A DNA stretch of 64,000 nt, taken from NCBI GenBank assembly GCA_002269645.1, contig NIVC01000507.1:372001-436000 (forward strand), in the 5' to 3' direction. Origin of the DNA: Macrostomum lignano. Lineage: Eukaryota. Of the stretch, positions 14,916 through 62,261 are shown one piece after another; the stretch's first letter is position 1; each line of letters starts with the position of its first letter. The position numbers were made by a program, and so were the translations under genes. Below the pieces are notes generated by a model that saw only the letters and a list, made by a program, of their open reading frames with translations, did not search any database and had not been told where the DNA came from.

Positions 14916-15750
14916 ATGTATGCAGGTCAGACACAAATTCCTTATTCTGTTTCAGTCTCAGATATATTTAAAAATACGAATTTACTTCCACAGCTGCACT
15001 TGCTATTCCGCTTGTCGTTCTGTCGTTGATGGCTCTGATGCCTGCCTGCATGTTCAGGTCCGGAGACACCTGGACTTGCAGGCAACGGATGCGTTTCCAT
15101 CCGGCATTCTCGTTGCCCAGTTCGAGCCGGCCTCTCTCCGCTGCAGTCTCTTCCGCTACCAGTCCGTGTGTCGCGACCTTGTCTCTAGCGGTGCGAGCAG
15201 CGACTGCCGAGTGCTCATCCGATTTCCGATCAAATATCCGGCTCAGCTCAACCCGAAGCTCACAAACGTGTGGCTCGGAGAAGACATGTCTGCATTTGAG
15301 AATGTCGTGTGCCAGGCTGACGAAGAGACCAACCGAATTTATCCGGTCGGAGTCCAGTGGACAGAGGAGGGCGCCGCGTTCGATGGGAGCAGCTCGTTTC
15401 TGGCCATGAACAAGAGCGACATCGGGTTCGGCACAGGCGTCACGGTGCTGCTCAGGATGAAGTGGCAGCCGCAGGTGCAGCTCTTCTTCGATTTTCTAAA
15501 CTGCCTTGAATTCGAAACCGGACCATTCTACCACCGTATCTGGGAGTTCGACGCTGCTTCTAAACTCCTTTTTGTGATCAAAACCGAAGCCGGCGCCACT
15601 CCCACTCGCTATCAAACTTCGACAACTCCGCTGACTTCGAACGCCAACGAGTGGGTGAACATCGGCTTCAAATCGACTCCATCGGCTTACTCGACGTGGG
15701 GAGCGTTCGTGAACGACGCCAATTCTTGCCGACGACTTTCTTTAGCCTGA
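14916..15750 (+). pseudogene. Copy C, signal peptide + Cys-rich region + ConA/LamG-like domain, frameshifting deletion
   Basis: Exon 14916-14925 (MYA), intron to 14993, signal AALAIPLVVLSLMALMPAC. About 76 nt is missing at ~15077 relative to A and B. Downstream frame has AAFDGSSSFLAM...TVLLRMKW...EWVNIGF. Confidence 0.55.
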
Positions 15751-18831: not shown

Positions 18832-21800
18832 ATGGAGTCAGACATTGTGAGGTAAGCAAAACTTTTAGTTTTTATCCAGTTCTTGTCATTTGTGTTTTTT
18901 TAATGCTGAATTTAATAGTATAATTTCTATATATAGGCCTGTGTTTGCTAGAGGTTGGACAGGATTAAAATCTTTGGGCGGGATTGGGCTCAGGAATAAT
19001 TTTTTCTTGGGATCAGGATCAGTATTGGGATTTGGGAATTGGGATCAGGTCTTTTAGTGTATTGTAGCTTGTGGGTCCATATAAAGATAAACAAAATTGA
19101 GCTAAAAATGTCAAGATGAACAACATTGTAGAATACAACAAAATTAATGCAAAGTTTTGTAACCAACAAATTAATAATGTAATAAGTACAGCATTCCTTC
19201 GGTTTACGATCCCTGAAATTGGTGACGATCCCCATAAGAAAGATATGCAAGAGTAAGAAATTCGTGTTTTTTAATCATTTTTTAAACCAGCACAAAAAAT
19301 CACTCCAAGCCTTTTTATTTTTCTGTCGTCAAACAATTGAATACCAACCAGATTGAAACGATGCAAAGAGATCTATTCATTCACATACATTCATCAAATT
19401 GAAAGAGTTGCTCGTTACAGAACTCGTTTTAGAACTGTTCCATGCAGAGGATCCTATATATCCACTAGTGATGGATCCAAACATTCGGATTTGGAATCCG
19501 AATCCAAAAAAAAGTTTTACTTTTATAGGAATCCGAATGTTTTGGATTCGGAATTTTTTTTCCGAATATTTCTGAATGTGCTTCTAAAATTCAAATCTAA
19601 AATAAAAATTGCAAATCAAGAAACCAAAGCATGCAACCTGTTAAATAAAGAAACTAAAAACTAAAAAGAAAGAAAATCACAAGGCAAAGAGCAAAATCTA
19701 TCACGTTATTCTTTTTTCTACGATTGTCTATTTTTGCAGCAATATATGTTTAAAAAAAGTTAATAAGTAAATTTACTCAACCTAGGGACCTGTAAGACAA
19801 TAAACCTAAAGTTACGGAAATATTTTGGTAATTATTGTTTAAGTGTAATAACAGGTTTTTTCAAAATGCAAAACTGCAACTGAATGGGTCACATGGACTG
19901 TACGTACAGTAAAATTATCATAATTGCACTGTATATATATGTCACTCATTAGCTATAGTCAGTAGTACTAGAATTAGATGTTCATGTAACACAGTAGAAG
20001 TAGAACTGAATTTCCTATCTAAGTCCGTCTCTTTAAATTTGGTTTCGCGATAGATATTAGTAGAGGTCAGACAAGCAGAAGATTTTGGTCATGCGTAAAT
20101 TTTTCAAAGTCAGGCGTGATCGTGATCGTGAATTTATATTAGCATACATGTATATTGAGCTCATAAGTTACAAGTGTTGAAAATAACAAACAGAAAAAGA
20201 AATCATACTCGTATATTGATAATAGCTACTGGGCCATAATGCTGTCAAGTCAACAAATTTAAAATTTATTAATTCTTTACACATTCGTGTTCCACATTTT
20301 TTGGTAAATCAAGTAGAAAAGTTATATTTCTAATAAAAAGGTAAGCAGAAATTCACAACTGTTGGAACAGGTTTCAACAAAATTACTATCGTGAAAAAAT
20401 GGTCCTGAGTTCACGATTATGATCATATCCGACCCCTAAGATAAAAGTACGAGTACAAATATAAGCCCAGGAGAGATGGAATCTTGTCAGTCAATTTATG
20501 TGCGCACTAATTAGATGACGAGACATTTTTGTAAATTAAAAGAGTCATAGTTACTCCCGCCGTTTACCTTACACTTTTTGCTTACATTCGGAAACATTCG
20601 GATTCGGAAATGGATTTTTTTTGTACATTCGGATTCGGTTTCGGAAACTTGCAAAAATCCACATTCGGTCCATCACAAATATCCACTTCAGTTTATGATT
20701 ATTTAAATGGCAGAAATACATGTAAATGATCGTGAACCAAAGGTAGGGGTTTTTTAGTGTACCATTTCACGTCTCAGAACTATTCCATAAAGACAATCCT
20801 ATATATCCACTTTGGTTTACGATCATTTAAATGGCAGAAATACATGTAAATGATTGTAAACCGAAGGTAGGGGGTTTTAGTATACCATTTCACGTCTCAG
20901 AACTGTTCCATGAAGATGATCCTATATATCCACTTTGGTTTATGATCATTTAAATGGCAGAAATACATGTAAATGATCGTAAACCGAAGGTAGGGGGTTT
21001 TAATGTACCATTTCACGTCTCAGAACTATTCCATGAAGACGATCCTATATATCCACTTCGGTTTACGATCATTTAAATGGCAGAAATACATGTAAATGAT
21101 CGTAAACCAAAGCTGAGGAGGGGTGGCAGCGTGCAGAGAATAATAAAGCATCAAGTTACTTGGGAGCGCACGTTAACTCAAGATGACATTTCAATTGCCA
21201 ACAAGCCAACAAATAAATATATGACTACATATGTCTTCGACACCCCCCTTAGCTTCGGTTCACGATCATTTAAATTAAAGAAATACATGTAAATGATTGT
21301 AAACCAAAGCTGAGGGGGGGTTGCAGCGTGCAGAGAATAATAAAGCATCAAGTTACTTGGGAGCGCATGTTAACTCAAGATGACATTTCAATCGCCAACA
21401 AGCCAACAAATAAATATATGACTACATATGTCTTCAACACCCCCCTCAGCTTTGGTTCACGATCATTTAAATTGAAGAAATACATATAAATGATCGTGAA
21501 CCGAAGTAGATATATAGGATCCTCGTCATCGCAATGCCATTAAAGAAACCATTTGTCGGCTATTCCGTTTAGTTTTTTCTAATGTAACGAATAAGCTCAG
21601 TTTAACAATTTTTGTTTATTTTAAGCAAGCTATGATCATTTATATGAAAAATTACATGGGGATTGTGAACCAAAATGTGGGTGGAAAAATGATCGTAAAC
21701 CAAAGGAATGCCATAAGTACAAGGTAAAAAAATACATTCAAGTAATCACTACTAATACATTTAAGTATAATTATTCTATTATACTAATTATACTATTAAT

Positions 21801-24800
21801 AATTATATAATATATAATAATTATATATATATATATAATTCTATATAATTCTAAATAATAGGCCTTAATTCTAAAATTCTATAAATTTTTAATCAAAAGA
21901 CCTGTTCCCGATTCTTGTGTTTTTTAGGGTCAGGATTCTAGTCCCGCAAGAATCCAATTTTTCTTGGGATCCCAAGATTTCGGGATTGGGATTGGGATCT
22001 CGTCCAACCTCTAGTGTTTGCATGCTTTTCTTATTTGCATTTGCATGCTAGTTGTACTAAGCAAATTTTGTGTATTAGGCCCTAGTGTTTGTTTGTTTCA
22101 AAATGCAGCATGCATGACATGCAACTGAAAGAATATGTAGGCCTAGTTGTCAGCATGTACAAGTGGCATGCAATATACATTATGATGTGCTGATATGAGC
22201 CATAACCCACACTCAGGAAGGTGTCACGTGTGCGCGGGAATATATTTCAGCGTATTTTTGGAGTGTGTGCTGTGCGTGAAGCTAAAATATGAATTTTTGC
22301 GCCGAGTTCTACATTTGTTTATTGACAAATACATAGCTAGAGTACTAATGCGCCGTAGCACTAAAAACTCGGTAAAAGTCCAATTAAAACAAAACTAAAA
22401 AAACGGATAAATTTTCGTACATTATGTAGGCTTTTTTCCAACTTAAAACTTTTTTTATTTAGCTTATGTAGAGAATTTTCAAAAGAAATAGCTCTAACTT
22501 TACTTTAAAATCCAATTTTGAATTTTATTATTTGTTTTATTTACCAAGAAACAGTTTTTTTATTGATATGCTTGGAAAAAACGTAATCTTAAAGCATATT
22601 TTACGCACTGCATATGCAGATTATACATTTAGGTGACTCAATGTAAGCTATTTTTTTCTGATCAGGTTTTGCTGTGCGCCACTGTGCGCTAAAAACTTCT
22701 GCTAAGCCTTTGTTGTGCGCTGTGTGCGCCACTTCGCGCATATTTTTTGTTGATATGCGCCGGAATTTTCCGCCATAATGTATACCTTCCTGAGTGTGGG
22801 CCATAACATACATACATAACTGCTTGACAACCCAGCTACCATAAATTGTGATGGACTAGGGGTAAGTCATAAAAATATCTATCCAAAAATACAAATGTAA
22901 TACTAATTAGATGATGAGGCAATTAGTCTTAATAAGACTGTCATAAGCCTAGTTAGGCCCCTACTCCTGCCATTTACCCAAACTTGCATTAATTTTGCTT
23001 TAGGGTTTCTTTTAAATGTAAGTTGCATGGCCAGTGTAAACATACATGCGCATCCTCTAAAATTCGGTCAGCCATGCAACTTAGTTTTAACAAAATGCAA
23101 CATAGTTTTTGGCCAAAAATGCAACCTAAATGTAAAAAAAACCTTGTGTAAGTAGCATAAAGCAAATTAATGCTACTTTGGGTAAACGGCAAGAGTAACT
23201 ATGACTGTCTTATTAAGTCAAAAAGCCTCATCAGCTACTTAGTACTACTTCTTGGGTATTTTTTAGGTGGGCATTTTTGTGACTTCCTTGTTTGGCCGCC
23301 AAATCGGTCAGCTGGATCGGCCGACTTGGCCGATTATTGCGCATGTATGAGTGTAAATCAGGCAGGTTGCACATGTATAAGCCCAAAGCTAGATTAATGA
23401 ATAATGTTAAAGCTATTTTTAGAAAATGTCTTTACAACTAGAGGATAAATTAATAAAGTGTTTTTGCTAAAGATATTTAGTAGAATGTATCTATGCCATT
23501 GAAAATAGTAGCATTTGTTTACTAGGTATATGTACATATAAACTATATTGTTAGATTAGCTGTAATAGAAGCTTATATTATTTAAGTTCAAACTGCTAAA
23601 AAGGTCATTTATTGTCACAACTGCAAAGAGGCCTTGTATTGTTGCAAGTAAAAAAGGTCCTTTATAGTTGCAACTGTGATCTGCATTATTGGCATCAACA
23701 TGCATTTAATTGGAGTTGGTTTGGTTTAAAGCATTCTGGCATGCACTTAGCATGATCTAGACTATGGTGCTTGACTTGATTTACTTGACTTTGCTACAGG
23801 GCTATTAGAGGGGACATAGTGGTAATGCACAAATGCCAATGAATTCTGCTAATCCCTGAATAGCCAACAAATTGCTATGGACAAAGGGTTGGCATCACCT
23901 AGTGAGGTTCCCCAGTGTTGCCAGCAGCTATGATGCTTTCTGAAAAAGAGAGTTCAGCTTCACAGGTGGCTTAGAAATAGCGCATGAGCTGATAAACATT
24001 TTTAGCTCTGCATGATTTAGTAATTAATATGTGTGACCCAAGGTAAGCAAGTCTGGCTGGCATAAATATAGGAAAAATGCTAACAAAATGTTTAGTGGTT
24101 TTGTAAGGTTTAATGAAATGAAGGGATAGAAAGTGCTAGCTGGTGGTTCTTATTTGATTTGGTTTGTATATAAGCCAGGCAGTAGAAGAAGGTAAAGATT
24201 ATTCACAATGGGCACCATTTATTTATAGTCATCAGGAGCATTGCTAGAAACTTCTAGAACATTCTGTGCATTATAACAAAACAAAGATTAACTATGCATT
24301 CCTTTTGGATCTGCATTAATTGTATTGCTAACTCACTATAACTAATTATACAATAAATATTTATAAATATAAGTATTGAAATTAGTTTATGTAAGAGAAC
24401 TGTCTAGAATTTAAGTTGTACTCTATTGGGGAAATTTCTAGAAAGAAATGATTATCATACTGTATCAAACTGTCAAAGGTCAATATAGTTTCATCATCTA
24501 AGTTACATAAACTACAGATGATGTTGGTGGCACTATGGTGCATATGCTATGGACTTGTTTAGTGTTGGAATCCATTTGTTTATTGTTAGTGTGCATTTGT
24601 ATATTTGGTTTGGGGCATTCCATTGTGCACTTAGAATGATCCAGACTATGGTATCTTTAGTATATACAAGGGTTGTTTAATAAGTTTGTGGAAAAAGTAA
24701 CTTCCTTTAAAGTTGCAATTCTTATTCAATTTCGACTTGGCCAATCTGCCTCTGAGTGCTTGCAGATGTTTCAAAAAGCCTTTGGTGATAAAGCCCCATC

Positions 24801-27800
24801 CTAGATGATGGTATACAAGTGGTTTGGCTGATTTTGTTCTTGCTGCCTGGAGCTGGATGATGACAAATGCAAAGGCCATCCAAATTTGGCCATTACAAAT
24901 GCAACAATGGTCAGTGTCCAAAAACTGCTTGATAAAGATTAATAAGTGACTATTTGCAAAATGGAGAAACATGTTAGGATTTTGGATTCAAGCCCCATTT
25001 CTATCTTGCATGATCATCTGGGCATGAGAAAAGTGTCTGCGCGCTAGGTGTCCCACCACTTAAACTTGACCCAAATGCAAGCTTGTGTTGAGTTTGTCAA
25101 ACTTCATCCTCAACAAATTCAATGCAAGGGCTTCAAATTGATGGACAATATCCCAGGGTTTTTTGTGCAAAATTTGTATTCCTGCGACATTTTTTTCAAA
25201 TGGCACAAATTATTTGAAGGCTAGATGCTACTTTGGCACATATTAATTTTCAATTTAGCATATCCTCTTTTTTGATTTTTGAGTTTTAAATGTTGAAAAC
25301 TTTTTTATTTTTATTTCAATTTTTCATTTATTTCTTTTTTGTTTGCTTATATACATTTTGTGACAAATGTAATTAAAACCATTTTAAATGCATGTCAAGT
25401 AAACAATTTAAAAAAAATTTCATGGGCACATTGAGTTTCAAAATGACACAAGTTTTTTAGTCAAGGTGCCATATAGCACATGTTTTCAAATGAAAAATGC
25501 CCTGACAATATCCTGACAGGCCCTATTAGAATAAATGTTAAAAACCCGCAGACGCGCACTTCAGAAAAGAGTCAAACTATTTTACCGCGCTTTAGGATTA
25601 TTAGAGATGTTCCAAAAGATCTGCAGTTTCATCGAAAGCAAAATTCGCTAACTTTCCAAAATCAAAATTGAAATTTCCCGAAATCATAATTCAGAAAAAC
25701 AAGTTTAGTATGAGGAACACACTTCTTTACTTTCAATTTACTGCTTAAGCAAAAAGTAATACATGTATATGTAGTAGAAAGTAGTTTTATTTTTAGCGAC
25801 TTTTTAGACACTACCAAAATTTTCACTTCTAAATTTTTTTTTCAAAATTGAAAATTGCTCTAAAAATTTCAAATTTTGGAAAATTGAAATTGAATTTTCG
25901 GAACATCTCTAAGCTTAATAAATAACAAGTGTATAAGCCCCTTCAACAGAGGTATTATACCCATTTCCATGTATATGTATTTGCTAGAGCAGCAGCCAGT
26001 AAGAAAGGGCAGCGCGCAGGCGATGCGCCTGTGTGCGCACTGCGCTTTAGAAAAATTTCAAATGTGCGCTGGACACTGTCCACTGTTTTACAACTTTTTC
26101 CTATAGGGCTGACAGGAGATGAAATTTGGATTTACTTTTATGACCCAGAGACAAAATCCCAGAGTAGGCAGTGGATTGCCTTCAAAGAGGACGCCCCTAT
26201 CAAATTCCTACATGAGAGAAGTGTTAGCAAGGTCATGACAGCAGTCTTCTTCTAGCAGTGTGGCATCCTGCTGCCCATTCTACTCAAGGAAGGTGCCACA
26301 GTGACTGGTCACTGGTACTCAAGTGTCTGCTTGCCCTAGGTGCTAGAGTTCCTCTGTCAAGAGCAGCCAAAGAGCAGACCATGCCATTCTCTTGCACTAT
26401 AACAACACTCTAGCTCACCAAGCTAGGGTGACACAGGAGTTTCTGGCATCAACTCAGCTGACTCTGCTGCCATATCTAGCCTACTCACCCGACCTTGCTC
26501 TAGCTGACTTCTCTTTTTGAAGATCAAGCAGAATCTTAAGGGAAAGTGCTTTGACTCATGCAAGGAGCTTGAAGAGGCATTGAAAGCAGAGCTAGAAGCA
26601 GTCACTCAGGTGGAATTGAAAGACTGTTTTGCAGCATGGTTTCATAGGATGCAGAAATGCATCAATCTTTTTACCAAAAAAGATCTTGCTACCAAAAAAG
26701 CTACTTAGAATGTTACCAGAAAGCTGCTTAGAATGCTACCACAAAGCTACTTAGAATGCTACCAGAATGCTACTTAGAATGTTACCAGAAAGCTACTTAA
26801 AATGCTACCAGAAAGCTACTTAGAATGCTACCACAAAGCTACTTAGAATGCTACCAGAAAGCTACTCAAAATGCTACTAAAGAGCTACTAAAAATGCTAC
26901 TAGAAAGCTACTTAGAATGCTACCAGAATGCTTACTTAGAATTCTACTAGAATGCTACCACAAAGCTACTTAGAATGCTACCACAAAGCTACTTAGAATG
27001 CTACCACAAAGCAACTTAGAATGCTACCACAAAGCTACTTAGAATGCTACCAGAAAGCTACTCAAAATGCTACTAAAGAGCTACTAAAAATGCTACTAGA
27101 AAGCTACTTAGAATGCTACCAGAATGCTACTAGAATGCTACCACAAAGCTACTTAGAATGCTACCACAAAGCTACTTAGAATGCTACCACAAAGCTACTT
27201 AGAATGCTACCACAAAGCTACTTAAAATGCTACCACAAAGCTACTTAGAATGCTACCACAAAGCTACTTAGAATGCTACCAGAATGCTACCACAAAGCTA
27301 CTTAGAATGCTACCAGAAAGCTACTTAGAATGCTACCACAAAACAACTTAGAATGCTACCAGAAAGCTACTTAAAATGCTACCACAAAGCTACTTAAAAT
27401 GCTACCAAAAAGCTACTTAGAATGCTACCAGAAAGCTACTTAAAATGCTACCAAAAAGCTACTTAGAATGCTACCAGAAAGCTACTTAAAATGCTACTAG
27501 AGAGCTACTTAGAATGCTACCAGAAAGCTACTTAGAATGCTATCAGAGAGCTACTTAGAATGCTACCAGAGAGCTACTTAGAATGCTACCAGAAAGCTAC
27601 TTAGAATGCTATCAGAGAGCTACTTAGAATGCTACTAGAACATTACTTAGAATGCTACCAGAATGCTATCAGACTTATTTGAAGAAGAAATATTGTAAAA
27701 TACAGCAGTAGGATTAATAAAAGAGAATTTTAGAACTAGTACAACTTGGTGGCATTGGTAAAATAGTTTTTAGAAGATAGAACAGTTAGCCCTACTATAG

Positions 27801-30800
27801 CTAGTGGCATCACTGGGATATTGTTAAGAAGGAAATAAGCCCTAGGACAACTTTGGTACCATCGGTGGGATTATTCTAGAGGGCAGAAGCAAGCAACCCC
27901 TAGGATACAATAATGTTAAAATATGCATGGTTTTTTATTAGAATGAAAAAAAAAATTTTGTTACTGACTTTTTGTTATACAGCTTAAACAAAAATCAAGT
28001 TTGCCATCCCTCTGGACCATCAAGATAGACAACAATTCTGCCAGGTCAGATTTTTCCTGTAACTGCTAGTTCAATAAACCCTAGTATATCCCACAGATAC
28101 TAAAATAACTAGACAAGCCACTTAGCACATTTGTATACAAGCAAATTTCAGTTCAGTATTAAGTTGAACAAGCATTGTAATGTATTTTAAAGACAACGCT
28201 CATTTATTTACCCCCAAGCTTCCTTTCAACTCCATACAAAACCTCCACCCCTACCCTGCCATCCAAATTTTCTTACCTTCCTCAGTTCTAGTCTAGATCT
28301 GCCTTGTACATTTCAATGGCTAATGTACATTATGGATGAACCAATTAGCAAGCTGTTTATGTCTGCAAGCTTGGGCTTCTAAACTTATCAAAGTAATCTC
28401 AGCTGCCTTTATTCTTAAAAAAAATAGCTTCTGTATTCTTCTTTGCTACTGAACTGAAAGTAGAAGGCTGTTTTTGCTAAGTATTGAATATGTGCTTGAG
28501 TGGCCCATCTAGTTATTCTAGTATCTGTAGGATATATCCTTGTATACTTTGCCTCAGAGGACCCTTGCCAACCATCAAATTTCATCAGCACATTGAGGCA
28601 TTTCTAAATCACGCTCTAACTTAGTCAATGCCCTTCACCTAGGCATGCTTCTAAACTTTCAACAGGTAGCACAAGGTAACTATAGACATGTGTGCGCATT
28701 GTAAATTTCTCTGATTTATTTTATCAAGCCTTGATAGTAAGGCAAGCCTCAATTTTTAATATAATCAATTAATCTTTTAAGCACTGTCTTTATCTCGCAC
28801 TATTAGCTCCTTCAATGAGGTAATACCAAGCAACTATAAACATAGCAAGTGAAACAATGGTTATGAACAAATGGCAAAAGTTGGACATGATCAATAAAAA
28901 GTTAATGAAAATAAACTAAAAAACTAATTTCTTTGGTTTGCTCAGATGATATAAAATATAATGGCAGCCTTCTTAGCCTGCTGTGTATACCTTTGAGTAC
29001 ACTGTTGTAATCTAAGGATACCATGTGGGAGCCAAAGCTGTTACACATGCTACAAGTTTTAAATTTTATATTATCATAGATTAAATTTGATTGTATTAAA
29101 TCTTCATAGATTTTATAAGTCCTGTATAGGATCTATAAAATAAAAAGTTGATTTAAGGTGGGATTCTAATCCCCAAAAATGTTGATCCTGCCTTGAACTT
29201 TGATAAAAACTTGCTACTATATATTTTTTTGTTTAAAACAGGCAGAAAATGCGATCTGAAATGGCCAAACTAATCAATACAAACTGTGACGAACTGCTGG
29301 GCATCTGGCGCAGAATGGGCATGACTACCCAATTCCAATTGGAGTCACGGCTGCCAGTGATCCTTGGCTGGGTGTCCGATCTCATGGTTGACATGGTCCG
29401 CGGCGAGGCCATCGAAGAGATGGCTCTGTCAGATTCTGTTACTAATAAGTTAGCGGCCGCTCGTCAGTTGCACTCGGAGCTATTAGCGGAATTGTCGGTT
29501 GCTACGGCTGGGGCTGAGCGAGCCGCGATGACAGCGGAACTGACTAATCTAACTCCAGATAGGATTATTGACGAACAGTGCGGCCTTATACAGCGGGAAC
29601 AATTGTTGAATCAATTTACTGGCAAGTTGCATACGATGCGTTTGAGATTGGCGCTATTGTGTACGATTGCTCAGATGCGTACTCTGTGGCGTAGACTGCA
29701 GATTGACAGGTTGGTTCACTTCAACTTTCGTTTGAAGTATACTAATATTAGGAAGGCAATAAAAGACCTAGGTGTAGGGAGGGAAAGGAGTGGGCTACGG
29801 TAGGCAGAGGAATTGTGTAAGGGTAGGGAGAGGATCTGAGTAGGGTAGGGAGAGGATCTGAGTAGGGTAGGGAGAGGATCTGAGTAGGGTAGGGAGAGGA
29901 TCTGAGTAGGGTAGGGAAAGGATCTGAGTAGGGTAGGGAGAGGATCTGAGTAGGGTAGGGACCTCAGTAGGGTAGATAAAGGATCTGAGTAGGGTAGGGA
30001 GAGGATTTGAGTAGGGTAGGGAGAGGATCTGAGTAGGGTAGGGAGAGGATCTGAGTAGGGTAGGGATCTCAGTAGTGTAGATAAATGATCTGAGTAGGGT
30101 AAGGGAGAGGATTTGAGTAGGGTAGGGATCTCAGTAGGGTAGATAAATGATCTGAGTAGGGTAGGGAGAGGATCTAAGTAGGGTAGGGAGAGGATCTGAG
30201 TAGGGTAGGGAGAGGATCTGAGTAGGGTAGGGATCTGAGTAGGGTAGGGATCTGAGTAGGGAGATCGGAGTTAACTAGGGAGATAAAATGGGTACGGATA
30301 GGGATCGGAGAACAGTAGACAGCTGGGCAGATAGTATACCCTACTAAGGCCCGGCACTTGTTAACCAAATCGCTGCAGTCCAGACGCCGGGCGGCAGTAC
30401 TGGGAGAGCCTGGCCGCCAGCCAGGCGCCAACGCATGACACCCTGCGCCGCATGGAGGCTGAGCTGTCCAGACTGCGCCAGCTTGTTGTGCCGAAATTGC
30501 GCGAATGCATCGCCGATTGTCGCCGTGAAATCATCGAACTTTGCGATCGTTGCTTGGCGGCGCCGTCCGAACTGGACCAGCTGCGGCCTCTGCTGGATTC
30601 GCAGGACTGGACAGAGGAGCTGCTGGATCGGCACGAGGCCGAGGCTGCGCGACTTCGCCAGCGGTTCGATCGGCACTCGGATTTTTACACCTGCGTAGCT
30701 GACTGGCAGGTGAGGCTGGGGTTTGATTGGCTCTGCGATGCCTCTGTTAGTTTGTCAATTAGTTAGTTAGTCAGTTAGTTAGTTAGTAAAATAGTTAGAC

Positions 30801-30807
30801 AGTTAGT

Positions 30808-30838
<31 letters not shown>

Positions 30839-30843
30839 TTAGC

Positions 30844-30875
<32 letters not shown>

Positions 30876-31065
30876 GGTTAGTTAGTTAGTTAGTTGGTTA
30901 GTTAGTTAGTTAGTTAGTTAGTAAAATAGTTAGACAGTTAGTTGGTTAGTTAATTGGTTAGTTATTTAGTTAGTTAGTTAGTTAGTTAGTTAGTTGGTTA
31001 GTTAGTCAGTTAGTTAGTTAGTAAAATAGTTAGACAGTTAGTTGGTTAGTTAGTTGGTTAGTTAT

Positions 31066-31114
<49 letters not shown>

Positions 31115-31173
31115 CAGTTAGTTAGTTAGTAAAATAGTTAGACAGTTAGTTGGTTAGTTAGTTGGTTAGTTAT

Positions 31174-31211
<38 letters not shown>

Positions 31212-31267
31212 GGTTAGTTAGTTAGTTAGTTAGTTAGTTAGTCAGTTAGTCAGTCAGTCAGTCAGTC

Positions 31268-31302
<35 letters not shown>

Positions 31303-31379
31303 CAGTTATTCAGTCAGTTAGTTAGTTAGTTATTAGTTAGTTAGTTAGTCAGTCAGTCAGTTAATCAGTCAGTTAGATG

Positions 31380-31421
<42 letters not shown>

Positions 31422-31458
31422 CAGTTAGTTAGTCAGTCAGTCAGTTAGTTAGTTAGTC

Positions 31459-31509
<51 letters not shown>

Positions 31510-32418
31510 AGTGAGTTAGTTAGTTAGTTAGTCAGTAGGAGTAGTATAACTAGCAACTTTAATCGCATAGCAACCGTGCGCCCCATCCAGGCGGGCTGGA
31601 ACAGTCTCCAGACTCTGCTGCAGCGCCTGAAAGACCCAGCCGTTCTGAACAACCGCGGTGGCGTGCTGCTTCGACTTGAACGCGAGAAAAACGAGCCCAG
31701 ACTGTGCTGACTGCTAAGGAGGCCGAACTGGTCAATCTGGCCGCTTCCGCAGCTGGCCAGTCCAGCCCACTGACTGTCCGCGGTCAAGCTGTCGAGGACT
31801 TCCTGTCAACCGAGAAGCATCGCGCTCAAGCTGAGAAAGAGAACGAAGCTAAGCGTCGGATGGAGAAGCACGAGACAACGCTGCGACGTGAGCTGCAATT
31901 TGGCTCGAAGCCGGCCAGCCCGCTGCAGCGTCGGGTCATTCACAATTCCAGCAGGATGGTGTGCAAGGTAAGCAAAGTAAAAATTCCTGTTAGTAGATTA
32001 CGAGGCAACATAGTCATAGTTACTCCTGTTTACCTAAAATTTTGTCTTGATAAGCTGGCGAGGCGTTTTATGTTTATCAGATAGTCATAGTTACTCCCAC
32101 TGTTTACCCATACTTTTATGTGCTACCACAAACGTTCTCCAACAGTAGTTCCTCCGATGGAACTTAATACGAGTATAAAGAGCTAAAATATCCCACGCCT
32201 CGAATTCCATTCAATTAATCCCTCTAGACCCCTGCAACGCCAGCCTCTGCGATGAAGAGCACCCCGATTGGCAAAACCTCGGCCAATTATTCAGCCGCGT
32301 CGGCCGCTAAGTCTGTCGGCCGGCCGCATCTGTTGCGAACTCCCGCAGCTCACGCTGGCGGATCCGCTTTTAAAAAGCTGACTCCGGTAATCCCCTGGTG
32401 TAGTGGTAGTAGCAGTGT

Positions 32419-32484
<66 letters not shown>

Positions 32485-32559
32485 TAGTAGTAGTGGTAGT
32501 AGTTGTAATGATATTGGTAGAGGTAGTAGTATAAGTAGTAGTAGGTAGTAGTAGTAGTT

Positions 32560-32591
<32 letters not shown>

Positions 32592-36525: not shown

Positions 36526-39500
36526 TCAAATATAATTAGATAGCCAGCGGAAGGCCTCGCCGTAGCCTTGGCGTTTCAGAATGGAGCACATGAACAGCTC
36601 CAATGGTCTCTGGGCCAGCTCGTTACGGCTGCGAGCGTCGCTCTTGCCAGTGGTCCGGCCGTGCAGGCCCAGATAGTAGCGCAGCTCCTCCTCTGAGGCG
36701 GCACCCGGCTTGTCAATTTTATTGCCAAGCACGAGAATTGGGGCGCTGGCAACCTGCTCGTCAGCCAGTAGGTTGTCCAACTCTACGTGGGCCTCTTCGA
36801 GCCTGATGCAGAAGTAAAACAAGATTACTGTTAAAATGGTACCACAGATTAATAAGAAGGTACTGATAATAATATCTGAGAAGGAAGCTGAGCAGACACA
36901 AAGTTTGAGCATACCAGATAGAGTCAGGCTCTGCAGGCCACATGTGGGCTGTAGTTGTCTGACCCCTGACATTTGGTTACAGTTTACTTAGGAAAATTGT
37001 ATTTCCAAAGTCCCGGGATCACATTTGCACCCAAAATGTTAAAAATAGTGATCTTGTCCAACTTTTACCTAAAGCTAGGCCTATGGTACTAGGACCCCCA
37101 TTATAGCAAAACAAAAATTTGACTACTAAAAACAGATAACTAAGATTGTTAGCTCTATTTTTGACAAAACTAAGCATATTTAAGGTATATCTATACAAAG
37201 AACACTATGACACATATATAGTTTTAAATCTCCAAAAACATAAAAAATATATTTTTTTATTTTTGCTTTAAGAAAGTCTTCTAATTTATTAAAATGTTTG
37301 TACATACTAAATAAATATAGCATTGATACTGTAATGTAATTATAATACAAATTTTGAATTTTTTTTGCTTTATATGACTTTCATATTCTTGCTTTATATT
37401 TATAGACAATTTTGATCACATCTTTCCCTAATCCTATGTATTAATACTTTTGTATGACATTTTCATATATTGCTTTCATTGAATAAAGAAATTTCTATCA
37501 TATATGGAGCTGTATACTATGGCAATTTTAATATTTACCTTCTGTTATGCAAGAGTATCCCTATATATTTTTGAAATACTTCCAATTTTCCCATTTTTTC
37601 TGAAAAATACTCATTTCTACTAATCTACATTGTCTTCTCTATTCTGAAGGTAACTACAGCTGCTGATATCAATTCGTTTGATAGGATTATAATTTTTCTC
37701 CATGGAGATGTTTGATAACTTGCTGAATGTTTTATTTAAGCTTCATTACAATTCCCTCCTGGACCCCCTTAGTCTCCAAATTTATCTACCTAATCTACAA
37801 TAAACCCCCATGCCTCTATTGAAGTTTAGGTACATAAAATCAATCTCTATAAAGATTCTCTCCACCCTAAAACCCCTTATTTCTCATGCCTTGGTGGTTG
37901 GTGGTTGTCAGCCACCCCCCTTAGGTTCGAAATTTATCTACCTAATCTTCAATAGATCTCCATATCTCCATAGAAGTTTAGGCACATAAAATCTATCCTC
38001 ATGAAGATTCTCCCCACCCTAAAACCTCCCATTCCCTATGCCGTATTGTTTGTGGTTAATAGCCCACCCTGCCCCCCAGACTTGCCTCTTCCCTCAGCCT
38101 TTGAATTTATCTACCTAATCTTCAATAGACCTCCATGCCTCTATTGAAGTTTAGATGTGTAAAATCAATCCCTGTGAAGATTCTCCCCACCCTAAACCCC
38201 CCATTTCCTATGCCCCAGTAGTTGGCTTTAAGCTACAAAAAATGAAGCTTAAATTTGAAATCAGCACCATCAAAAACCCCTACAGAGACAAAATTATGAT
38301 CCTAACAAAACTGCAACTATTTTATCTATCTAAAGTTAAAGAAGTCCAAGATATATATAAATTCATAAAAAAATTAAATAATTGATTTATTTTACAAAAT
38401 ATTCTTAAACAAACATAGGATATTTATTATATAAATATAAATACACTGTAACTGTTGCCCTTTTGACAGTTGCCCTTTTGACCTGTAACCATCTTATATA
38501 CTAAAAGGAAGTGCTTATCCCCATGGTCCCCTGCCGATAATTCCAATTTTATCCACACGGATCCATATCAATAATTTTCAGCTTATCCCCACGGCTAAGA
38601 TTGTATAGTTGTTTGTGTTTAGTTTTGTGTACTGACATCAAATTGATATTATCATTATTATTAGTAATATTATCATTATTATTAGTAATATTATCATTAT
38701 TATTAGTAATATTATCATTATTATTAGTAATATTATCATTATTATTAGTAATATTATCATTATTATTAGTAATATTATCATTATTATTATATTTTGAATT
38801 TTGAATTTTGCTAGTCTCATTCGCCTTGATCTTTTGGTCATTTGGTTGTTTTAAGCAAAGCCGGCAGCTAAGCAAATTTAAAATTAACCCTTTTACAATG
38901 ACAAAAGTATTAACAAAGTACTCAATATTATACAGTATTCAGTACATGTAGTTTATTTGGAAGATTTGTAAAACAGTGAAAACAAAAAGACAGTTTTTGA
39001 ACAGATTCATTTTTAGGCTCTTTATTCTAATAAGCTGCCATGGAGTTAAGCTGTAAATTATTGACATGGATCCATGTGGATAAAATTGGAATTATTGACA
39101 TGGCCTATAGACTTTAATGGTGGCAGCTATTTCAATAAGCTGCCATGGGGATAAGCTAGAAATTATTGACATGGATCCATGTGGATAAAATTGGAATTAT
39201 AGAGATAAGCACTTCCATACTAAAAATGAGTTATTTGTATATGGGTATGCAATTGATATGAGCTAAGTTTGAGGAAAAAAAGCCATTGGTTTGTTTGTGA
39301 AACTGCAAGCTTAATGATAAAACTTGGCCATTAAATTAGTTTTTATATCTATAAAGTGTTATTTACTTTATAGTGAGAAATCATAAAAAGTGCTAAGAAA
39401 TTTCTTATAAAATGCTTTACTTTAAGAGAATTGAAATGAGAATTGAAAGACAACAAAGATAAGCTGTTTAAATATGTAAAATTTAAAACATTATTTGGGC

Positions 39501-40149
39501 CTATTTTTTTAAATCAAGTAATCTAAACTAAATGTTAAAAGTAAAACATATTATGGGGAAAAAATAGCTTATTATATTAGCTTCGAATTTTATCATTATT
39601 GTTTTGCCAGCTAGAACTTATAATTTTTTAATTTTCAAAATATAAAAGCATCTTTTGGCTATTGCACTGGATTGACTATATAGGCCCTAAACAAGTCATA
39701 TTTTGGAATGTGACTTGTCAGTTTTAAAAAAAAAACAATCCTTTGAAAAATATGAGTTTAACATTCTAAGGAAAACAGGATAATTTTTTATCTTTGACAA
39801 CAGTATTTTTATCTTTAAAGCAGACTTACCTTTGTCTGTCCCATGCATCAACAATAAAGACAATACCATCAACTGCAGGAAAATATGTCTTCCATACTTT
39901 CCTTGCTTGTTCATGACCACCAAGATCAAAGGTTGTAAACTTCATTCCACCAATTGATAGCTCTTCTGTTGTGGGATAAAGCGTTGGATTGTGTGTACCC
40001 ATACGATCGTCCTTGAGCATATGCAAAAGTGTAGTTTTTCCAGCATTGTCTAGTCCTAAAAAGACAAGCTTTCCGCTCTTTTTCCATAGGCCCAAATAGC
40101 CGAGAATTCCAGAAACGGAGCCGGATATCCAGTCCCACCAGCCGCTCAT
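36526..40149 (-). CDS. SAR1: SAR1 small GTPase (COPII), 198 aa
   Basis: Exons 40149-39830 and 36802-36526, phase 2. [20 protein letters not shown] and [20 protein letters not shown]. Confidence 0.97.
36975..38490. mobile_element. Possible non-autonomous TIR element (GGTTACAG...CTGTAACC) with internal ~120-bp repeats
   Basis: 8-bp inverted termini and three related units at 37740-38200; no TSD found. Confidence 0.35.
38507..39216. mobile_element. Mutator-like (MULE) MITE with long TIRs and 9-bp TSD ATACTAAAA
   Basis: GGAAGTGCTTATC...GATAAGCACTTCC; TSD at 38498-38506 and 39217-39225; ~85-bp TIR; internal 21-bp AT repeat at 38635-38790. Confidence 0.9.
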
Positions 40150-43630: not shown

Positions 43631-44004
43631 GGGTCTGATCAGTGATCTGTCACTATTAAATCCGTGAGCCGTATATACCCCATCCCTATATATATCGCAC
43701 CGGTGATCGATTGCAAAGTATCATGCAGCCGGGCACTAAAAAGTGCACGTGCAAAAACAGGGTCCTTGCCACACGCCAGCAGTTTTACAATCTTAATTAA
43801 GTTTTTAAAAATGATCGATAGAGAATTAGGAGAAGTTTATCCAACAGCTGAGTAATTAATGGATAAACTTGCAATTCTTAGCTCCTACTTTACGAGCTCG
43901 TACCTTGTTGGTTGTATTTACAATACATGGCACACGTACATAGATATGCATTCTGAAGCGCCTGCGCTAAACATGCTATCTGCACAGGCATGTTTCTCTG
44001 ACAA

Positions 44005-45490
44005 GGGCGATTCTTCGGGACTGTCTAGGGCGATTTTTCGGGACTGTCTAGGGCGATTTTTCGGAACTGTCTAGGGCGATTTTTCGGAACTGTCTAGAGC
44101 GATTCTTCATGACTGTCTAGGGCGATTCTTCGGGACTGTCTAGGGCGATTTTTCGGAACTGTCTAGAGTGATTCTTCATGACTGTCTAGAGCGATTCTTC
44201 GGGATTGTCTAGGGCGATTCTTCGGGTCTGTCTAGGGCGATTTTTCGGAACTGTCTAGAGCGATTCTTCATGACTGTCTAGGGCGATTTTTCGGAACTGT
44301 TTAGGGCGATTATTCGGGACTGTCTAGGGCGATTCTTCATGACTGTCTAGGGCGATTTTTCGGAACTGTTTAGGGCGATTATTCGGGACTGTCTAGGGCG
44401 ATTCTTCATGACTGTCTAGGGCGATTCTTCGGGACTGTCTAGGGCGATTCTTCATGACTGTCTAGGGCGATTCTTCAAGACTGTCTAGGGCGATTTTTCG
44501 GAACTGTTTAGGGCGATTCTTCGGGACTGTCTAGAGCGATTCTTCGGAACTGTCTAGGGCGATTTTTCGGAACTGTCGAGTGATTCTTCATGACTGTCTA
44601 GAGCGATTATTCGGGACTGTCTAGGGCGATTTTTCGGAACTGTCTAGAGCGATTCTTCATGACTGTCTAGGGCGATTTTTCGGGACTGTCTAGGGCGATT
44701 TTTCGGAACTGTCTAGGGCGATTCTTCATGACTGTCTAGAGCGATTCTTCGGGACTGTCTAGGGCGATTTTTCGGAACTGTCTAGAGTGATTCTTCATGA
44801 CTGTCTAGAGCGATTCTTCGGGATTGTCTAGGGCGATTCTTCGGGTCTGTCTAGGGCGATTTTTCGGAACTGTCTAGAGCGATTCTTCATGACTGTCTAG
44901 GGCGATTTTTCGGAACTGTTTAGGGCGATTCTTCGGGACTGTCTAGAGCGATTCTTCGGAACTGTCTAGGGCGATTTTTCGGAACTGTCGAGTGATTCTT
45001 CATGACTGTCTAGGGCGATTTTTCGGGACTGTCTAGGGCGATTTTTCGGAACTGTCTAGGGCGATTCTTCGGGACTGTCTAGGGCGATTCTTCATGACTG
45101 TCTAGGGCGATTTTTCGGAACTGTTTAGGGCGATTATTCGGGACTGTCTAGGGCGATTCTTCATGACTGTCTAGGGCGATTCTTCGGGACTGTCTAGGGC
45201 GATTCTTCATGACTGTCTAGGGCGATTCTTCAAGACTGTCTAGGGCGATTTTTCGGAACTGTTTAGGGCGATTCTTCGGGACTGTCTAGAGCGATTCTTC
45301 GGAACTGTCTAGGGCGATTTTTCGGAACTGTCGAGTGATTCTTCATGACTGTCTAGGGCGATTTTTCGGGACTGTCTAGGGCGATTTTTCGGAACTGTCT
45401 AGGGCGATTCTTCGGGACTGTCTAGGGCAATTCTTCGGGACTGTCTAGGGTGATTCTTCGAAAATATTTGGAGCGATTTTTAAGGACTTC
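44005..45490. repeat. Satellite, 23-bp unit ctagggcgattcttcgggactgt, with higher-order blocks
   Basis: About 64 units in three variant classes. Confidence 0.97.
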
Positions 45491-46005
45491 TTAGGGTGAT
45501 TCTGAGACAGTTCTGTGAGACAACCGACAATCCGAAATCCCGACATGTTTTTCGATTTCCCGAATCGTCACTCGGCGGTCTGCATCGAGCAGCTTTCGGA
45601 CACTGGCCACAGTCGTGTCTGAGATGGACGAATTTGGACGGCCTTCACGTTCATCATCGTCCAGCTCCAGACAGCCGGAGCGGAATCGACCGAACCACTT
45701 GTACACCATCGTCTGGGATGGGGCTTCACTCTCAAGGGCCTTTTGAAGCGTCTGCAAGCATTCGGAGGCAGACAGGCCAAGCCGGAATTGGACCAGAATT
45801 GCGACTCGCCTGTCGCGCTCAGTCAGGCGCAGCACTGGAGCGGGGGTTACATCACTTCTTCGGCCACTGCGTCGCAACATTTTGGCCAAACTGGCTGAAA
45901 ATTTGTGTGAAAGGTGCCAATATCTGAAGGAATAAGTTCATAAAATTTCGTTTGATTCGCTTGAAGATAAGTTTGGTTTTCCGCGAACTTATTAAGCAGC
46001 CCTCG
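45491..46005 (-). mobile_element. Mariner 5' half (TIR plus HTH region of the transposase), truncated by satellite
   Basis: TA-CGAGGGCTGCTTAATAAGTTCGCGG TIR at 46007-45980. Open ORF 45889-45491 with QFRLGLSASECLQ, MVYKWFGRF, DDEREGRP and DRRVTIREI. Confidence 0.92.
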
Positions 46006-46844
46006 TAATAATAATAAAAGTAAAAAAGTTTTTTTTCAAAAAAACATGATTCCAGCTTTTAGAAGAAAAACACAAAAAGTACAACTTTATCGAATACGCA
46101 ACAAGATAACAATTTCATAAGTTAATATATTTATTTAATAATTCTTTCTGCAAATCGAAATACAATGTCCCTCCAAAACAATGTGTAAGAGCGCGATTAA
46201 AAAGCACTTATATCCAAGAGTAAATTAATCGATAATTAGTTAGATTTATTATTAATTTAGTCCGCATAAATTAAAAGTGCACAAATCAAGGTCAAAGGGA
46301 GCCACACTGATAATTAACATATTATGATATTATATTACCCAGGTGTGAAGACAAAGACGAGCCCAAAGGGTGGCGCAGCCAGAAAGCGATTACGGCTAAT
46401 AAAGTAATTAATCAGAGATAACAAATTAATTAACAGCATAGGGTGCAGCTTCAACTAATCAATAACGCTTACGGTACGTACTAGTATATAAGCGAAAACC
46501 AGGTAAAAATAATATTAATATTTAGCATACGATACTACTGAAGCGCAGTAAGGGCAGCATCGCTACAGCAGCAGGGAGTTCGCAGAATAAGCAAACAAAC
46601 AAATATAACTTTTATAACGAATGACCGCACAATATTACTAGTATTTCATTGAAATTGAAAATAGAAATAATATATGCATACATTTATACATCGCTTAATT
46701 TACATCAGAACTACTCGCGGTGTTCTGACAGTTTTATATAAACATTAGTTGTCAACCGAAAAAGGCACTGATTTTTATCTTCGATAGTTTTGCTTCTTGG
46801 AGACAGCACAGTTTGTAAGATATTTTTGGGAGGATCTGATAAAC

Positions 46845-48175: not shown

Positions 48176-48332
48176 TTGCAGAACAAATTACAAGTAACTG
48201 TCAAACTGTCAGTGTTCAGTGGCTTCAAAAAAAGAAAATCTTTCAATATTCTGTCTCGATTCGATTAAAACAGACAAACTAACATTAATGAATACAGATA
48301 TAATAGACATAAATGTACTTATAAACATACTC

Positions 48333-56705: not shown

Positions 56706-61474
<4,769 letters not shown>

Positions 61475-62165: not shown

Positions 62166-62261
62166 CAATAAGTAGCTAGTGCAACAATTTCCTTAGCTCT
62201 ATAGTGACTCCTTTAAAATTGGCATGACGCTTAATTTTATGTTTGAAATTGTGTATATTTT

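What the first reader, a model, noticed from the sequence alone, without database searches (positions are those of the whole stretch)
24667..26665. Two related mariner copies, one stripped of CpG: a fossil record of cytosine methylation
The copy in PRC1 intron 1 (24727-24988) aligns without gaps to the intergenic copy (45790-45529, minus strand) over 262 bp. By eye the intergenic copy has 22 CpG and the intronic copy has 1. About 18 of the 21 lost sites became TG, CA or TA, while GpC sites persist. The TIR shows the same pattern (tacgagggctgcttaataagttcgcgg versus tacaagggttgtttaataagtttgtgg). Established: 5mC deamination produces this spectrum. Inference: methylation targets gene bodies or old transposons in a lineage where methylation is often thought to be low or absent.
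Basis: partly seen in the sequence, partly recalled or inferred. Interest (0 to 1): 0.8.

Follow-up and report, generated by a model that had tools for sequence, protein, structure and literature searches.

The report
CpG-stripped mariner copy in CpG-free intron block
An old, dead mariner transposon and the roughly 6 kb of non-coding DNA around it have lost almost every CpG by C-to-T change, the usual footprint of past DNA methylation, while a young copy 20 kb away is untouched; this is a clean but ordinary example of a known effect in an unidentified animal.

Summary
Copy A (24727-24988) aligns without gaps to copy B (45790-45529, minus strand) at 75% identity, with 1 CpG against 22. A third copy from a metagenome (L001) polarises the changes. 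A lost 25 of 26 ancestral CpGs, 22 of them to TG, CA or TA, at about nine times the non-CpG C/G rate. B and L001 kept 24 and 25.

The loss is regional. A sits in a 5.9-kb CpG-free block (23341-29240, o/e 0.03-0.17). A second such block (36816-39982) is the SAR1 intron plus part of exon 1. Exons and equally AT-rich non-coding DNA elsewhere have o/e near 1.

B is young, so the mariner pair alone confounds age with location. Other repeats give the location effect. Repeats in the same intron show excess CpG transitions (p about 1e-4); arrays elsewhere do not.

Historical germline CpG methylation of intragenic non-exonic DNA is the best explanation. Methylation itself, the methyltransferases and the host lineage could not be tested. 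The host is an animal but is unidentified. This is a new example of a known phenomenon. The one odd point is that neighbouring exons are not depleted.

The parts
24665..25153 (+). Mariner copy A, 5' part. It holds TA plus the 5' TIR (24665-24691), then a deletion of about 155 bp relative to B and L001 that removes the start codon and the first ~40 codons (B's frame), then the decayed HTH region with stop codons.
   Evidence: HTH_48; Mos1. CpG o/e 0.15 and TG/CA o/e 1.53.
25154..25504 (.). Nested MITE-like insertion X1, with CAGGG...CCCTG termini and a 9-bp target duplication ACAATATCC. It is CpG-poor (1 CpG where 6 are expected).
25521..26108 (.). Nested MITE-like insertion X2, with CCCTAT... 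termini and an 8-bp target duplication CTGACAGG. It is not CpG-depleted (17 CpG, o/e 1.0), so it is younger than the decay of its host sequence.
26109..26665 (+). Mariner copy A, 3' part: the decayed catalytic domain. The first D is kept (DEIW), the second D is now N through a G>A change (HYNN), and the third D is kept with the same 34-residue spacing as Mos1. No 3' TIR was found.
   Evidence: Transposase_1; Mos1, E 8e-27. CpG o/e 0.07.
23341..29240 (.). CpG-free block D1. It comprises unique left flank, copy A, X1, X2, a 23-bp array and unique right flank, and it ends at the acceptor-like site of the first coding exon of the PRC1/MAP65-family gene.
   Evidence: The flanks have o/e 0.03 and 0.11 with TG/CA excess of 1.34 and 1.14.
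26687..27668 (+). 23-bp tandem array (about 43 copies, unit TGCTACCAGAAAGCTACTTAGAA, no CpG) that abuts the 3' end of copy A.
20679..21506 (.). 123-bp and 197-bp repeats in the CpG-normal half of the same putative intron. Their copies differ mainly by CG<->TG/CA.
   Evidence: CpG transitions per cell are 0.23 and 0.13, against 0.034 and 0.035 at non-CpG C/G.
29249..29740 (+). First coding exon (ATG at 29249) of a PRC1/MAP65/Ase1-family gene. CpG o/e is 1.01.
36816..39982 (-). CpG-poor block D2: the single intron of a SAR1 gene (36816-39829, o/e 0.15) plus the last 153 bp of its exon 1 (0 CpG where 5.6 are expected; GC3 0.24).
45529..46007 (-). Mariner copy B: a 479-bp 5' fragment with the TIR, the 5' UTR and an open reading frame for the first ~120 codons. 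It is cut off at 45529. CpG o/e is 1.12.
   Evidence: (HTH_48).
44004..45503 (-). 23-bp tandem array (64 copies, 2 CpG per unit) that abuts the truncation point of copy B. It shows no excess of transitions at CpG.

Best explanation
Copy A is an old, inactivated mariner (IS630-Tc1-mariner, D,D34D type). It lies in a 5.9-kb stretch of non-coding DNA directly upstream of the first coding exon of a PRC1/MAP65-family gene. After insertion, this stretch lost nearly all CpG through C>T and G>A transitions at roughly nine times the non-CpG C/G rate. The SAR1 intron 8 kb downstream of this stretch did the same. This is the mutational footprint of spontaneous deamination of 5-methylcytosine in the germ line. 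The pattern implies regional CpG methylation of intragenic, non-exonic (probably repeat-directed) DNA, set in a genome whose default state is unmethylated (CpG o/e near 1). Depletion grows with the time a sequence has spent in such a region. Copy A and its flanks are almost CpG-free. Repeats of 92-93% identity in the same intron are part-way there. A recent MITE inside A is untouched. Copy B is a young truncated fragment lying in DNA that shows no CpG hypermutability. Shown: the direction, the context specificity and the regional extent of the CpG loss. Inferred: that methylation is the cause, and what the methylation is targeted to.
For: On A's branch, 51 of 55 changes are transitions and 47 of these are C/G>T/A. 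CpG sites changed at 26/52, non-CpG C/G at 19/110 and A/T at 4/150. Of 26 ancestral CpG, 25 were lost (13 TG, 6 CA, 3 TA), while B kept 24 and L001 kept 25 (statistics). Over 633 columns of A against L001, 44 of 46 CpG were lost. In 400-bp bins with arrays masked, CpG o/e is bimodal, and all 14 bins below 0.25 lie in 23.5-29.3 kb or 36.8-40.0 kb. The unique flanks of A have o/e 0.03 and 0.11, with TG/CA in excess. Controls of equal G+C have o/e 0.83, 1.01 and 1.33 (18852-23340, 40151-41500 and 46008-46800). The SAR1 coding sequence follows the domain, with GC3 of 0.49, 0.24 and 0.71. Repeats in the same intron show CpG hypermutability: 12/28 CpG sites against 9/101 non-CpG sites carry transition variants (p 1e-4). 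Arrays and duplicates at 10.2, 13-15, 44-45.5 and 47.7 kb show none (CpG 0.080 against non-CpG 0.090 per cell). In the inverted-repeat family of D2, the 3 CpG of one copy are CA or TG in the others. Preferential methylation of transposons inside genes is described for cnidarians (PMC8857917).
Against: No methylation data are available and the rest of the genome could not be reached, so 5mC, DNMT1/DNMT3 and UHRF1 are untested. Exons bordering the depleted blocks are not depleted (o/e 0.79-1.2, with many synonymous CpG). This is the reverse of the exon-biased gene-body methylation usual in invertebrates and is unexplained. Non-CpG C>T is also raised on A's branch, about 6 times the A/T transition rate. 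This excess appears in arrays across the window, so it looks like a genome-wide bias. MITE X2 inside the block has o/e 1.0, so current methylation there is unproven. Variant counts in tandem repeats are not independent events. Only one outgroup copy was found.
Confidence: 0.6

Rival explanations
1. Fossil of a methylation system that no longer acts. Non-exonic DNA was methylated in an ancestor and methylation was later lost or greatly reduced. Old sequence (D1, D2) keeps the scar. Everything now CpG-normal is either younger than the loss or was never methylated.
For: MITE X2 inside D1 has CpG o/e 1.0. Arrays elsewhere show no CpG hypermutability. About 24% of the window is tandem arrays, which suggests fast turnover of non-coding DNA.
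Against: The 123-bp and 197-bp repeats in the same intron are only 7-8% diverged, yet their differences are concentrated at CpG, so the process acted fairly recently. Repeats of similar or greater divergence elsewhere lack the signal, which points to place rather than time.
Confidence: 0.15
2. Age alone. CpG is hypermutable everywhere in this genome. A is old and B is young, so the contrast carries no information about location.
For: B is young: its differences from L001 fall mostly at third codon positions, its frame is open and its TIR is identical to L001's. A's changes are spread over all codon positions and include stop codons.
Against: AT-rich non-coding DNA elsewhere has o/e 0.83-1.33, and exons (which are old) have 0.8-1.2. 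The 64-copy array next to B has diverged about 15%, with CpG transitions (0.098) no commoner than non-CpG ones (0.130). The duplicate at 13338-13584 and 15079-15325 has 24 CpG dinucleotides (48 CpG sites) and no CpG transition. The o/e distribution is bimodal with sharp edges.
Confidence: 0.1
3. Hypermutation by a cytosine deaminase or a RIP-like process, directed at repeated DNA and independent of 5mC.
For: A's branch is almost purely C/G>T/A (47 of 55 changes, only 4 transversions), and about 40% of those changes are outside CpG.
Against: The same non-CpG C/G>T/A bias is seen in arrays all over the window, so it is a background bias. C>T and G>A events are not clustered by strand (51 runs against 51.9 expected). 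The preference is for CpG and produces a TG/CA excess, not the TpA excess of CpA-directed RIP as known from Neurospora (from general knowledge). Unique flanks and part of the SAR1 exon are affected as well. No RIP-like process is known in animals (from general knowledge).
Confidence: 0.05
4. Local differences in AT-biased mutation or in GC-biased gene conversion produce AT-rich, CpG-poor patches with no role for methylation.
For: D1 and D2 are AT-rich (G+C 0.30-0.36), and GC3 in SAR1 swings from 0.24 to 0.71.
Against: CpG is lost far beyond what the non-CpG C/G rate predicts (p 1.7e-11). Patches just as AT-rich keep CpG at o/e near 1.
Confidence: 0.05

Closest known systems
CpG depletion by 5-methylcytosine deamination in mosaically methylated invertebrate genomes (bimodal CpG o/e; methylated transposons inside genes, e.g. 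cnidarians, PMC8857917; repeat and gene-body surveys, PMC8857923)
   Same: CpG>TpG/CpA decay occurs at several times the non-CpG rate. CpG o/e is bimodal, with depleted domains in an otherwise CpG-normal genome. A transposon copy inside a housekeeping gene is affected.
   Different: Depletion is extreme (o/e 0.03-0.17, lower than a typical vertebrate genome). It is confined to intron-like DNA with sharp edges. The adjoining exons are CpG-normal, whereas exons are usually the most methylated part of invertebrate gene bodies (from general knowledge). Methylation itself was not observed here.
CpG decay of ageing transposon copies in vertebrates (e.g. Alu, L1, Hsmar1), used as a molecular clock
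   Same: Old copies lose CpG to TG/CA about ten times faster than other sites, and young copies keep them.
   Different: In vertebrates the decay is genome-wide. Here it is regional, and repeats elsewhere in the window show no CpG excess.
Repeat-induced point mutation (RIP) of fungi
   Same: It produces massive C>T/G>A change in a repeated element with few transversions, creating stop codons.
   Different: The host is an animal. The preference is for CpG with a TG/CA excess rather than for CpA with a TA excess. Unique flanks and an exon segment are affected. There is no strand clustering.
Mariner transposons of the Mos1/Hsmar1 type
   Same: HTH_48 and Transposase_1 domains are present. The match to Mos1 transposase spans 299 residues (E 8e-27). 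A 27-bp TIR is flanked by TA, and the D,D34D spacing is kept.
   Different: Both window copies are dead. A has stop codons, one frameshift, two nested insertions, a 5' deletion, no 3' TIR and D>N at the second catalytic residue. B is a 479-bp 5' fragment. The only close relative found is one metagenome contig.

Membership tests
Mariner (IS630-Tc1-mariner superfamily) | Transposase with an N-terminal paired HTH (HTH_48) and a DDE/D catalytic domain homologous to Mos1 | tested here: met
   For A: Pfam Transposase_1 at E 2.1e-8 and HTH_48 at 1.5e-5; PDB Mos1 3hos at E 8e-27 over residues 4-302. For B: HTH_48 at E 2.7e-9.
Mariner (IS630-Tc1-mariner superfamily) | D,D34D catalytic triad | tested here: inconclusive
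   In A's conceptual translation the first D (DEIW) and third D (LADF) are present. The spacing equals Mos1's in an ungapped stretch of the alignment. The second D reads N (HYNN against HDNA), a G>A change consistent with decay. B and L001 do not reach this region.
Mariner (IS630-Tc1-mariner superfamily) | Terminal inverted repeats at both ends, flanked by a TA target duplication | tested here: inconclusive
   A 5' TIR of 27 bp preceded by TA is present in A, B and L001. No 3' TIR was found in the window at up to 3 mismatches. A's 3' end runs into a tandem array and B is truncated.
DNA carrying the footprint of germ-line CpG methylation | CpG transitions to TG/CA much more frequent than non-CpG C/G transitions, polarised by an outgroup | tested here: met
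   26/52 against 19/110 (p 2.7e-5). 25 of 26 CpG were lost, 22 of them to TG, CA or TA. The saturation-corrected ratio is about 9.
DNA carrying the footprint of germ-line CpG methylation | Regional CpG deficit with reciprocal TpG/CpA excess, not explained by G+C content | tested here: met
   D1 and D2 have o/e 0.03-0.17 with TG/CA at 1.14-1.6. Controls matched for G+C have o/e 0.83-1.33 with TG/CA at 0.97-1.14.
DNA carrying the footprint of germ-line CpG methylation | 5-methylcytosine present at these sites, and DNMT1/DNMT3 encoded in the genome | not testable with these tools
   Only 64 kb of an unidentified genome is available, with no methylation data. Nothing in the window encodes a DNA methyltransferase (ORF list; Pfam).
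Invertebrate gene-body methylation (exon-biased, transcription-unit wide) | Exons of the affected gene are CpG-depleted at least as much as its introns | tested here: not met
   PRC1-family exons have o/e 1.01 and 0.95, and SAR1 exon 2 has 0.79. Only the last 153 bp of SAR1 exon 1 are depleted.
RIP-like or deaminase hypermutation | Strand-coordinated clusters of C>T, a non-CpG target preference, and restriction to repeated DNA | tested here: not met
   Runs test z = -0.18. CpG is preferred (0.50 against 0.11-0.26). The unique flanks are depleted.

The most novel reading that the evidence does not exclude
The host may belong to an animal lineage that lacks DNMT1/DNMT3 or is reported to lack 5mC. 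The only named relative of the window's LINE-like RT is from the flatworm Macrostomum, and the highest-identity named GPI hit is a trematode. Both hints are very weak. If so, these blocks would be direct sequence evidence of lost or overlooked CpG methylation. Alternatively, this genome may methylate intronic or repeat DNA while sparing the flanking exons, with boundaries at splice sites. That would be the reverse of the exon-biased pattern described for invertebrates.
Probability: 0.15. Interest if true: 0.7.

Novelty: new member of a known kind. Interest (0 to 1): 0.35.

Why it matters
The pair of copies plus an outgroup gives an internally controlled measurement of CpG hypermutability, about nine-fold, in an unsampled animal lineage. 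The window shows that the effect is regional. This predicts which segments a methylome would find methylated: the putative first intron of the PRC1-family gene and the SAR1 intron, but not the exons, the promoter-proximal DNA or the apparently intergenic region that holds copy B. If the host proves to be a lineage thought to lack methylation, or if the sparing of exons is genome-wide, the finding would bear on how methylation targeting evolved in animals. Otherwise it is a clean textbook case.

Tried and rejected
1. More copies of the family. A degenerate TIR pattern and a protein-alignment scan of the JGI metagenome contigs both found nothing. The protein search found a single relative (P0001/L001). 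The polarisation therefore rests on three sequences.

2. Host identification. GPI hits reach only about 73% identity, spread over arthropods, fungi, a trematode and bacteria. The N-terminal PRC1-like exon has no homologue. Relatives of the RT ORF reach at most 50%, with one named hit in Macrostomum lignano. Rfam and tRNA scans were empty. A paper search for the sample code found nothing. All that is established is that the host is an animal, from a GCK-III kinase exon scoring 287 bits against human STK25.

3. Homology of the two 23-bp arrays that abut the two copies. The best cyclic match is 12/23, with permutation p = 0.13, so it was rejected as unsupported.

4. Strand asymmetry of C>T against G>A, as a test for a transcription-coupled process. 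It was suggested in the 323-column set (30 against 15) but is absent over 633 columns (53/159 against 49/184).

5. A 3' TIR beyond either array. None was found.

6. Other dispersed repeats linking depleted and normal DNA. The mariner pair is the only one in the window.


Full report
OBSERVATION. 24727-24988(+) against 45790-45529(-) is a 262-bp ungapped alignment with 197 identities (75.2%). CpG is 1 against 22 and GpC is 16 against 17. Of the 21 CpG lost, 18 became TG (12), CA (3) or TA (3). blastn gives E about 1e-48, and this is the only dispersed repeat pair of its kind in the window. The quoted TIRs are exact (24665-24691 and 45981-46007). They differ at five positions, all C/G in B against T/A in A, and three of these are CpG.

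Copy A (24665-26665) is a mariner. Its conceptual translation matches Mos1 transposase over 299 residues (E 8e-27) and Pfam Transposase_1 and HTH_48. It is long dead:
- It carries stop codons and one frameshift.
- The second catalytic D reads N, a G>A change.
- About 155 bp behind the 5' TIR are deleted.
- It holds two nested MITE-like insertions with target duplications: X1 at 25154-25504 (ACAATATCC) and X2 at 25521-26108 (CTGACAGG).
- No 3' TIR can be found.

Copy B (45529-46007, minus strand) is a 479-bp 5' fragment with an open frame (HTH_48).

DIRECTION OF CHANGE. One relative was found, a 945-bp ENA metagenome scaffold (L001, protein P0001, 80% identical to B's ORF). It is CpG-rich (o/e 0.94) and its TIR is identical to B's. 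In the three-way alignment (323 shared columns), A's branch carries 55 changes.
- 47 are C/G>T/A transitions, 4 are A/T transitions and 4 are transversions.
- Per site, CpG positions changed at 26/52, non-CpG C/G at 19/110 and A/T at 4/150.
- Of 26 ancestral CpG dinucleotides, A keeps 1 (13 TG, 6 CA, 3 TA), B keeps 24 and L001 keeps 25.
- 13 of 20 ancestral GpC survive in A.

CpG against non-CpG gives Fisher p = 2.7e-5. At the non-CpG rate about 17 CpG should have survived, giving binomial p = 1.7e-11. Corrected for saturation, the CpG rate is about nine times the non-CpG C/G rate. Over 633 columns of A against L001, 44 of 46 CpG are gone.

The non-CpG C>T excess, about six-fold over A/T transitions, is real. 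The same bias appears among the units of tandem arrays all over the window (C/G transitions 0.09 against A/T 0.013 per cell), so it is a background property of this genome. C>T and G>A events along A are not clustered by strand (51 runs against 51.9 expected). That argues against a RIP- or APOBEC-like burst.

THE EFFECT IS REGIONAL, NOT A PROPERTY OF THE ELEMENT. With tandem arrays masked (24% of the window), CpG o/e in 400-bp bins is bimodal. The main mode is near 0.9 and a second mode lies at 0-0.2. All 14 bins below 0.25 fall in two blocks.
- D1 (23341-29240) holds copy A, X1, a CpG-less 23-bp array and 2.9 kb of unique flanks. The flanks have o/e 0.03 and 0.11, with TG/CA in excess at 1.34 and 1.14.
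- D2 (36816-39982) is the single intron of a two-exon SAR1 gene on the minus strand (o/e 0.15), plus the last 153 bp of its exon 1 (0 CpG where 5.6 are expected).

Within that one gene, GC3 runs 0.49 (codons 1-55), 0.24 (codons 56-106, inside D2) and 0.71 (exon 2). The regime therefore acts on synonymous sites too. Non-coding DNA of the same G+C elsewhere is not depleted: 18852-23340 has o/e 0.83, 40151-41500 has 1.01 and 46008-46800 has 1.33. The exons have 0.76-1.2. AT-biased drift alone cannot produce this pattern.

AGE VERSUS LOCATION. B differs from L001 mainly at third codon positions (32 against 14 and 12). Most of its divergence therefore arose in active elements under selection, and B itself is young. 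The mariner pair cannot separate age from place.

Other repeats can. The 123-bp and 197-bp repeats at 20679-21506 lie in the CpG-normal half of the same putative intron, and their copies are 92-93% alike. CpG sites there carry transition variants far more often than other C/G sites. The rates are 0.227 and 0.132 against 0.034 and 0.035 per cell, and 12/28 against 9/101 sites (p = 1e-4).

Arrays and duplicates elsewhere show no such excess:
- The 64-unit array next to B: 0.098 at CpG against 0.130 at non-CpG.
- 10224-10562: 0.094 against 0.090.
- 47689-48177: 0.071 against 0.077.
- The 97.6% duplicate at 13338-13584 and 15079-15325: 0 transitions in 96 CpG cells.

In D2, three CpG in one arm of an inverted-repeat family are CA or TG in the other copies. 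The window therefore supports a real location effect. Depletion scales with residence time: A and its flanks are stripped, the 20.7-21.5 kb repeats are part-way there, and MITE X2 is untouched (o/e 1.0). These counts are of cells and sites in repeats, which are not independent events, so the p-values are indicative only.

MECHANISM. The best-supported explanation is germ-line CpG methylation of intragenic, non-exonic DNA, probably repeat-directed with some spreading. Over time this erased CpG by 5mC deamination. It acts in a genome that is otherwise unmethylated (confidence about 0.6). It resembles the preferential methylation of transposons inside long, active genes described for cnidarians (PMC8857917).

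What does not fit the usual invertebrate picture is that the exons bordering D1 and D2 are CpG-normal and rich in synonymous CpG, with the block edges at the acceptor sites. Exon-biased gene-body methylation is therefore not what is seen. The rival explanations are a fossil of lost methylation (0.15), age alone (0.10), deaminase or RIP-like hypermutation (0.05), and compositional drift or biased gene conversion (0.05).

WHAT COULD NOT BE TESTED. Neither 5mC itself nor the presence of DNMT1, DNMT3 or UHRF1 could be tested. The host is also unidentified. It is an animal, from a GCK-III kinase exon scoring 287 bits against human STK25. GPI hits stop at about 73% identity, the N-terminal PRC1-like exon has no homologue in 5.8 billion proteins, and the RT ORF's only named relative is from Macrostomum lignano at 50%. 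The claim about 'a lineage where methylation is thought low or absent' cannot be evaluated.

The PRC1 label holds at family level: the joined exons hit Pfam MAP65_ASE1 at E 3.2e-15. The ATG at 29249 is 8 nt downstream of an acceptor-like site, and the upstream 5'-UTR exon it implies is unverified. D1 may therefore be intron 1 or upstream DNA.

VERDICT. The phenomenon, CpG decay as a footprint of mosaic methylation and of methylated intragenic transposons, is well known, so this is a new example of a known kind. Interest is modest, with an unexplained twist in the exon sparing and the extreme depletion. It would matter more if the host proves to be a lineage thought to lack methylation.

Noticed in passing
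whole window (e.g. 3668-4080, 11245-11783, 26687-27668, 33226-33950, 42644-43268, 44004-45503, 49214-49855, 54270-55136, 62261-63019): About 24% of the window consists of minisatellite arrays with units of 16-60 bp (many of 20-28 bp), plus (GTTA)n of 198 copies at 30746-31536 and (GTA)n at 32400-32646. They lie in introns and between genes. This density is unusual and may help to identify the host.
   Followed up: partly
26687-27668 and 44004-45503: Both mariner copies run directly into a 23-bp tandem array on their 3' side, in the same relative orientation. The unit consensuses match at 12/23, which is not significant (permutation p 0.13), so the adjacency may be chance in a genome this rich in arrays.
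   Followed up: yes
36526-40150 (minus strand): A two-exon SAR1 gene whose third-position G+C swings from 0.49 to 0.24 to 0.71 along 199 codons. The swing tracks the CpG-poor block rather than any gene-wide codon usage.
   Followed up: partly
29249-29740, 31704-31930, 36526-36815, 49880-50367, 59640-60330: Exons next to CpG-free intron DNA keep CpG at o/e 0.8-1.2, with many synonymous CpG. This is the opposite of the exon-biased methylation footprint usual in invertebrates and is unexplained.
   Followed up: partly
tandem arrays throughout the window: Variants among array units are dominated by C/G>T/A transitions (about 0.06-0.13 per cell) and A/T>G/C transitions are rare (about 0.01-0.03). 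This indicates a strong genome-wide GC>AT transition bias independent of CpG.
   Followed up: partly
25144-25520 and 26109-26116: Two different MITE-like elements inserted into adjacent target sites inside copy A (ACAATATCC and CTGACAGG, sharing one base). The older one is CpG-poor and the younger is CpG-normal.
   Followed up: partly
49214-49855: A 24-bp unit is repeated 26.8 times with 100% identity between two coding regions of the GCK-III kinase gene, and it is open in two frames on the minus strand. It is either a very recent expansion or under strong homogenisation.
   Followed up: no
13338-13584 and 15079-15325: A 247-bp duplicate at 97.6% identity inside two overlapping-ORF regions with no Pfam match. 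It has 24 CpG dinucleotides and no transition at any of them.
   Followed up: partly
758-1858 (minus strand): A non-LTR retrotransposon ORF (RVT_1) that stops inside the RT domain. Its best relatives are 46-50% identical, and the only named one is from the flatworm Macrostomum lignano.
   Followed up: partly
4975-5361: An ORF with a WSC (carbohydrate-binding) domain (Pfam E 6e-10). The gene it belongs to was not examined.
   Followed up: no
L001 (ENA ERZ28573510, scaffold BUSI22-1_SAMN19433715_METAG-scaffold_1027747): This is the only close relative of the mariner family found in the protein collection and metagenome contigs searched. It is an environmental metagenome scaffold, not a named genome. 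It has an intact TIR, an open reading frame over the N-terminal 141 codons and full CpG content. The sample's origin could not be confirmed from the literature search.
   Followed up: partly
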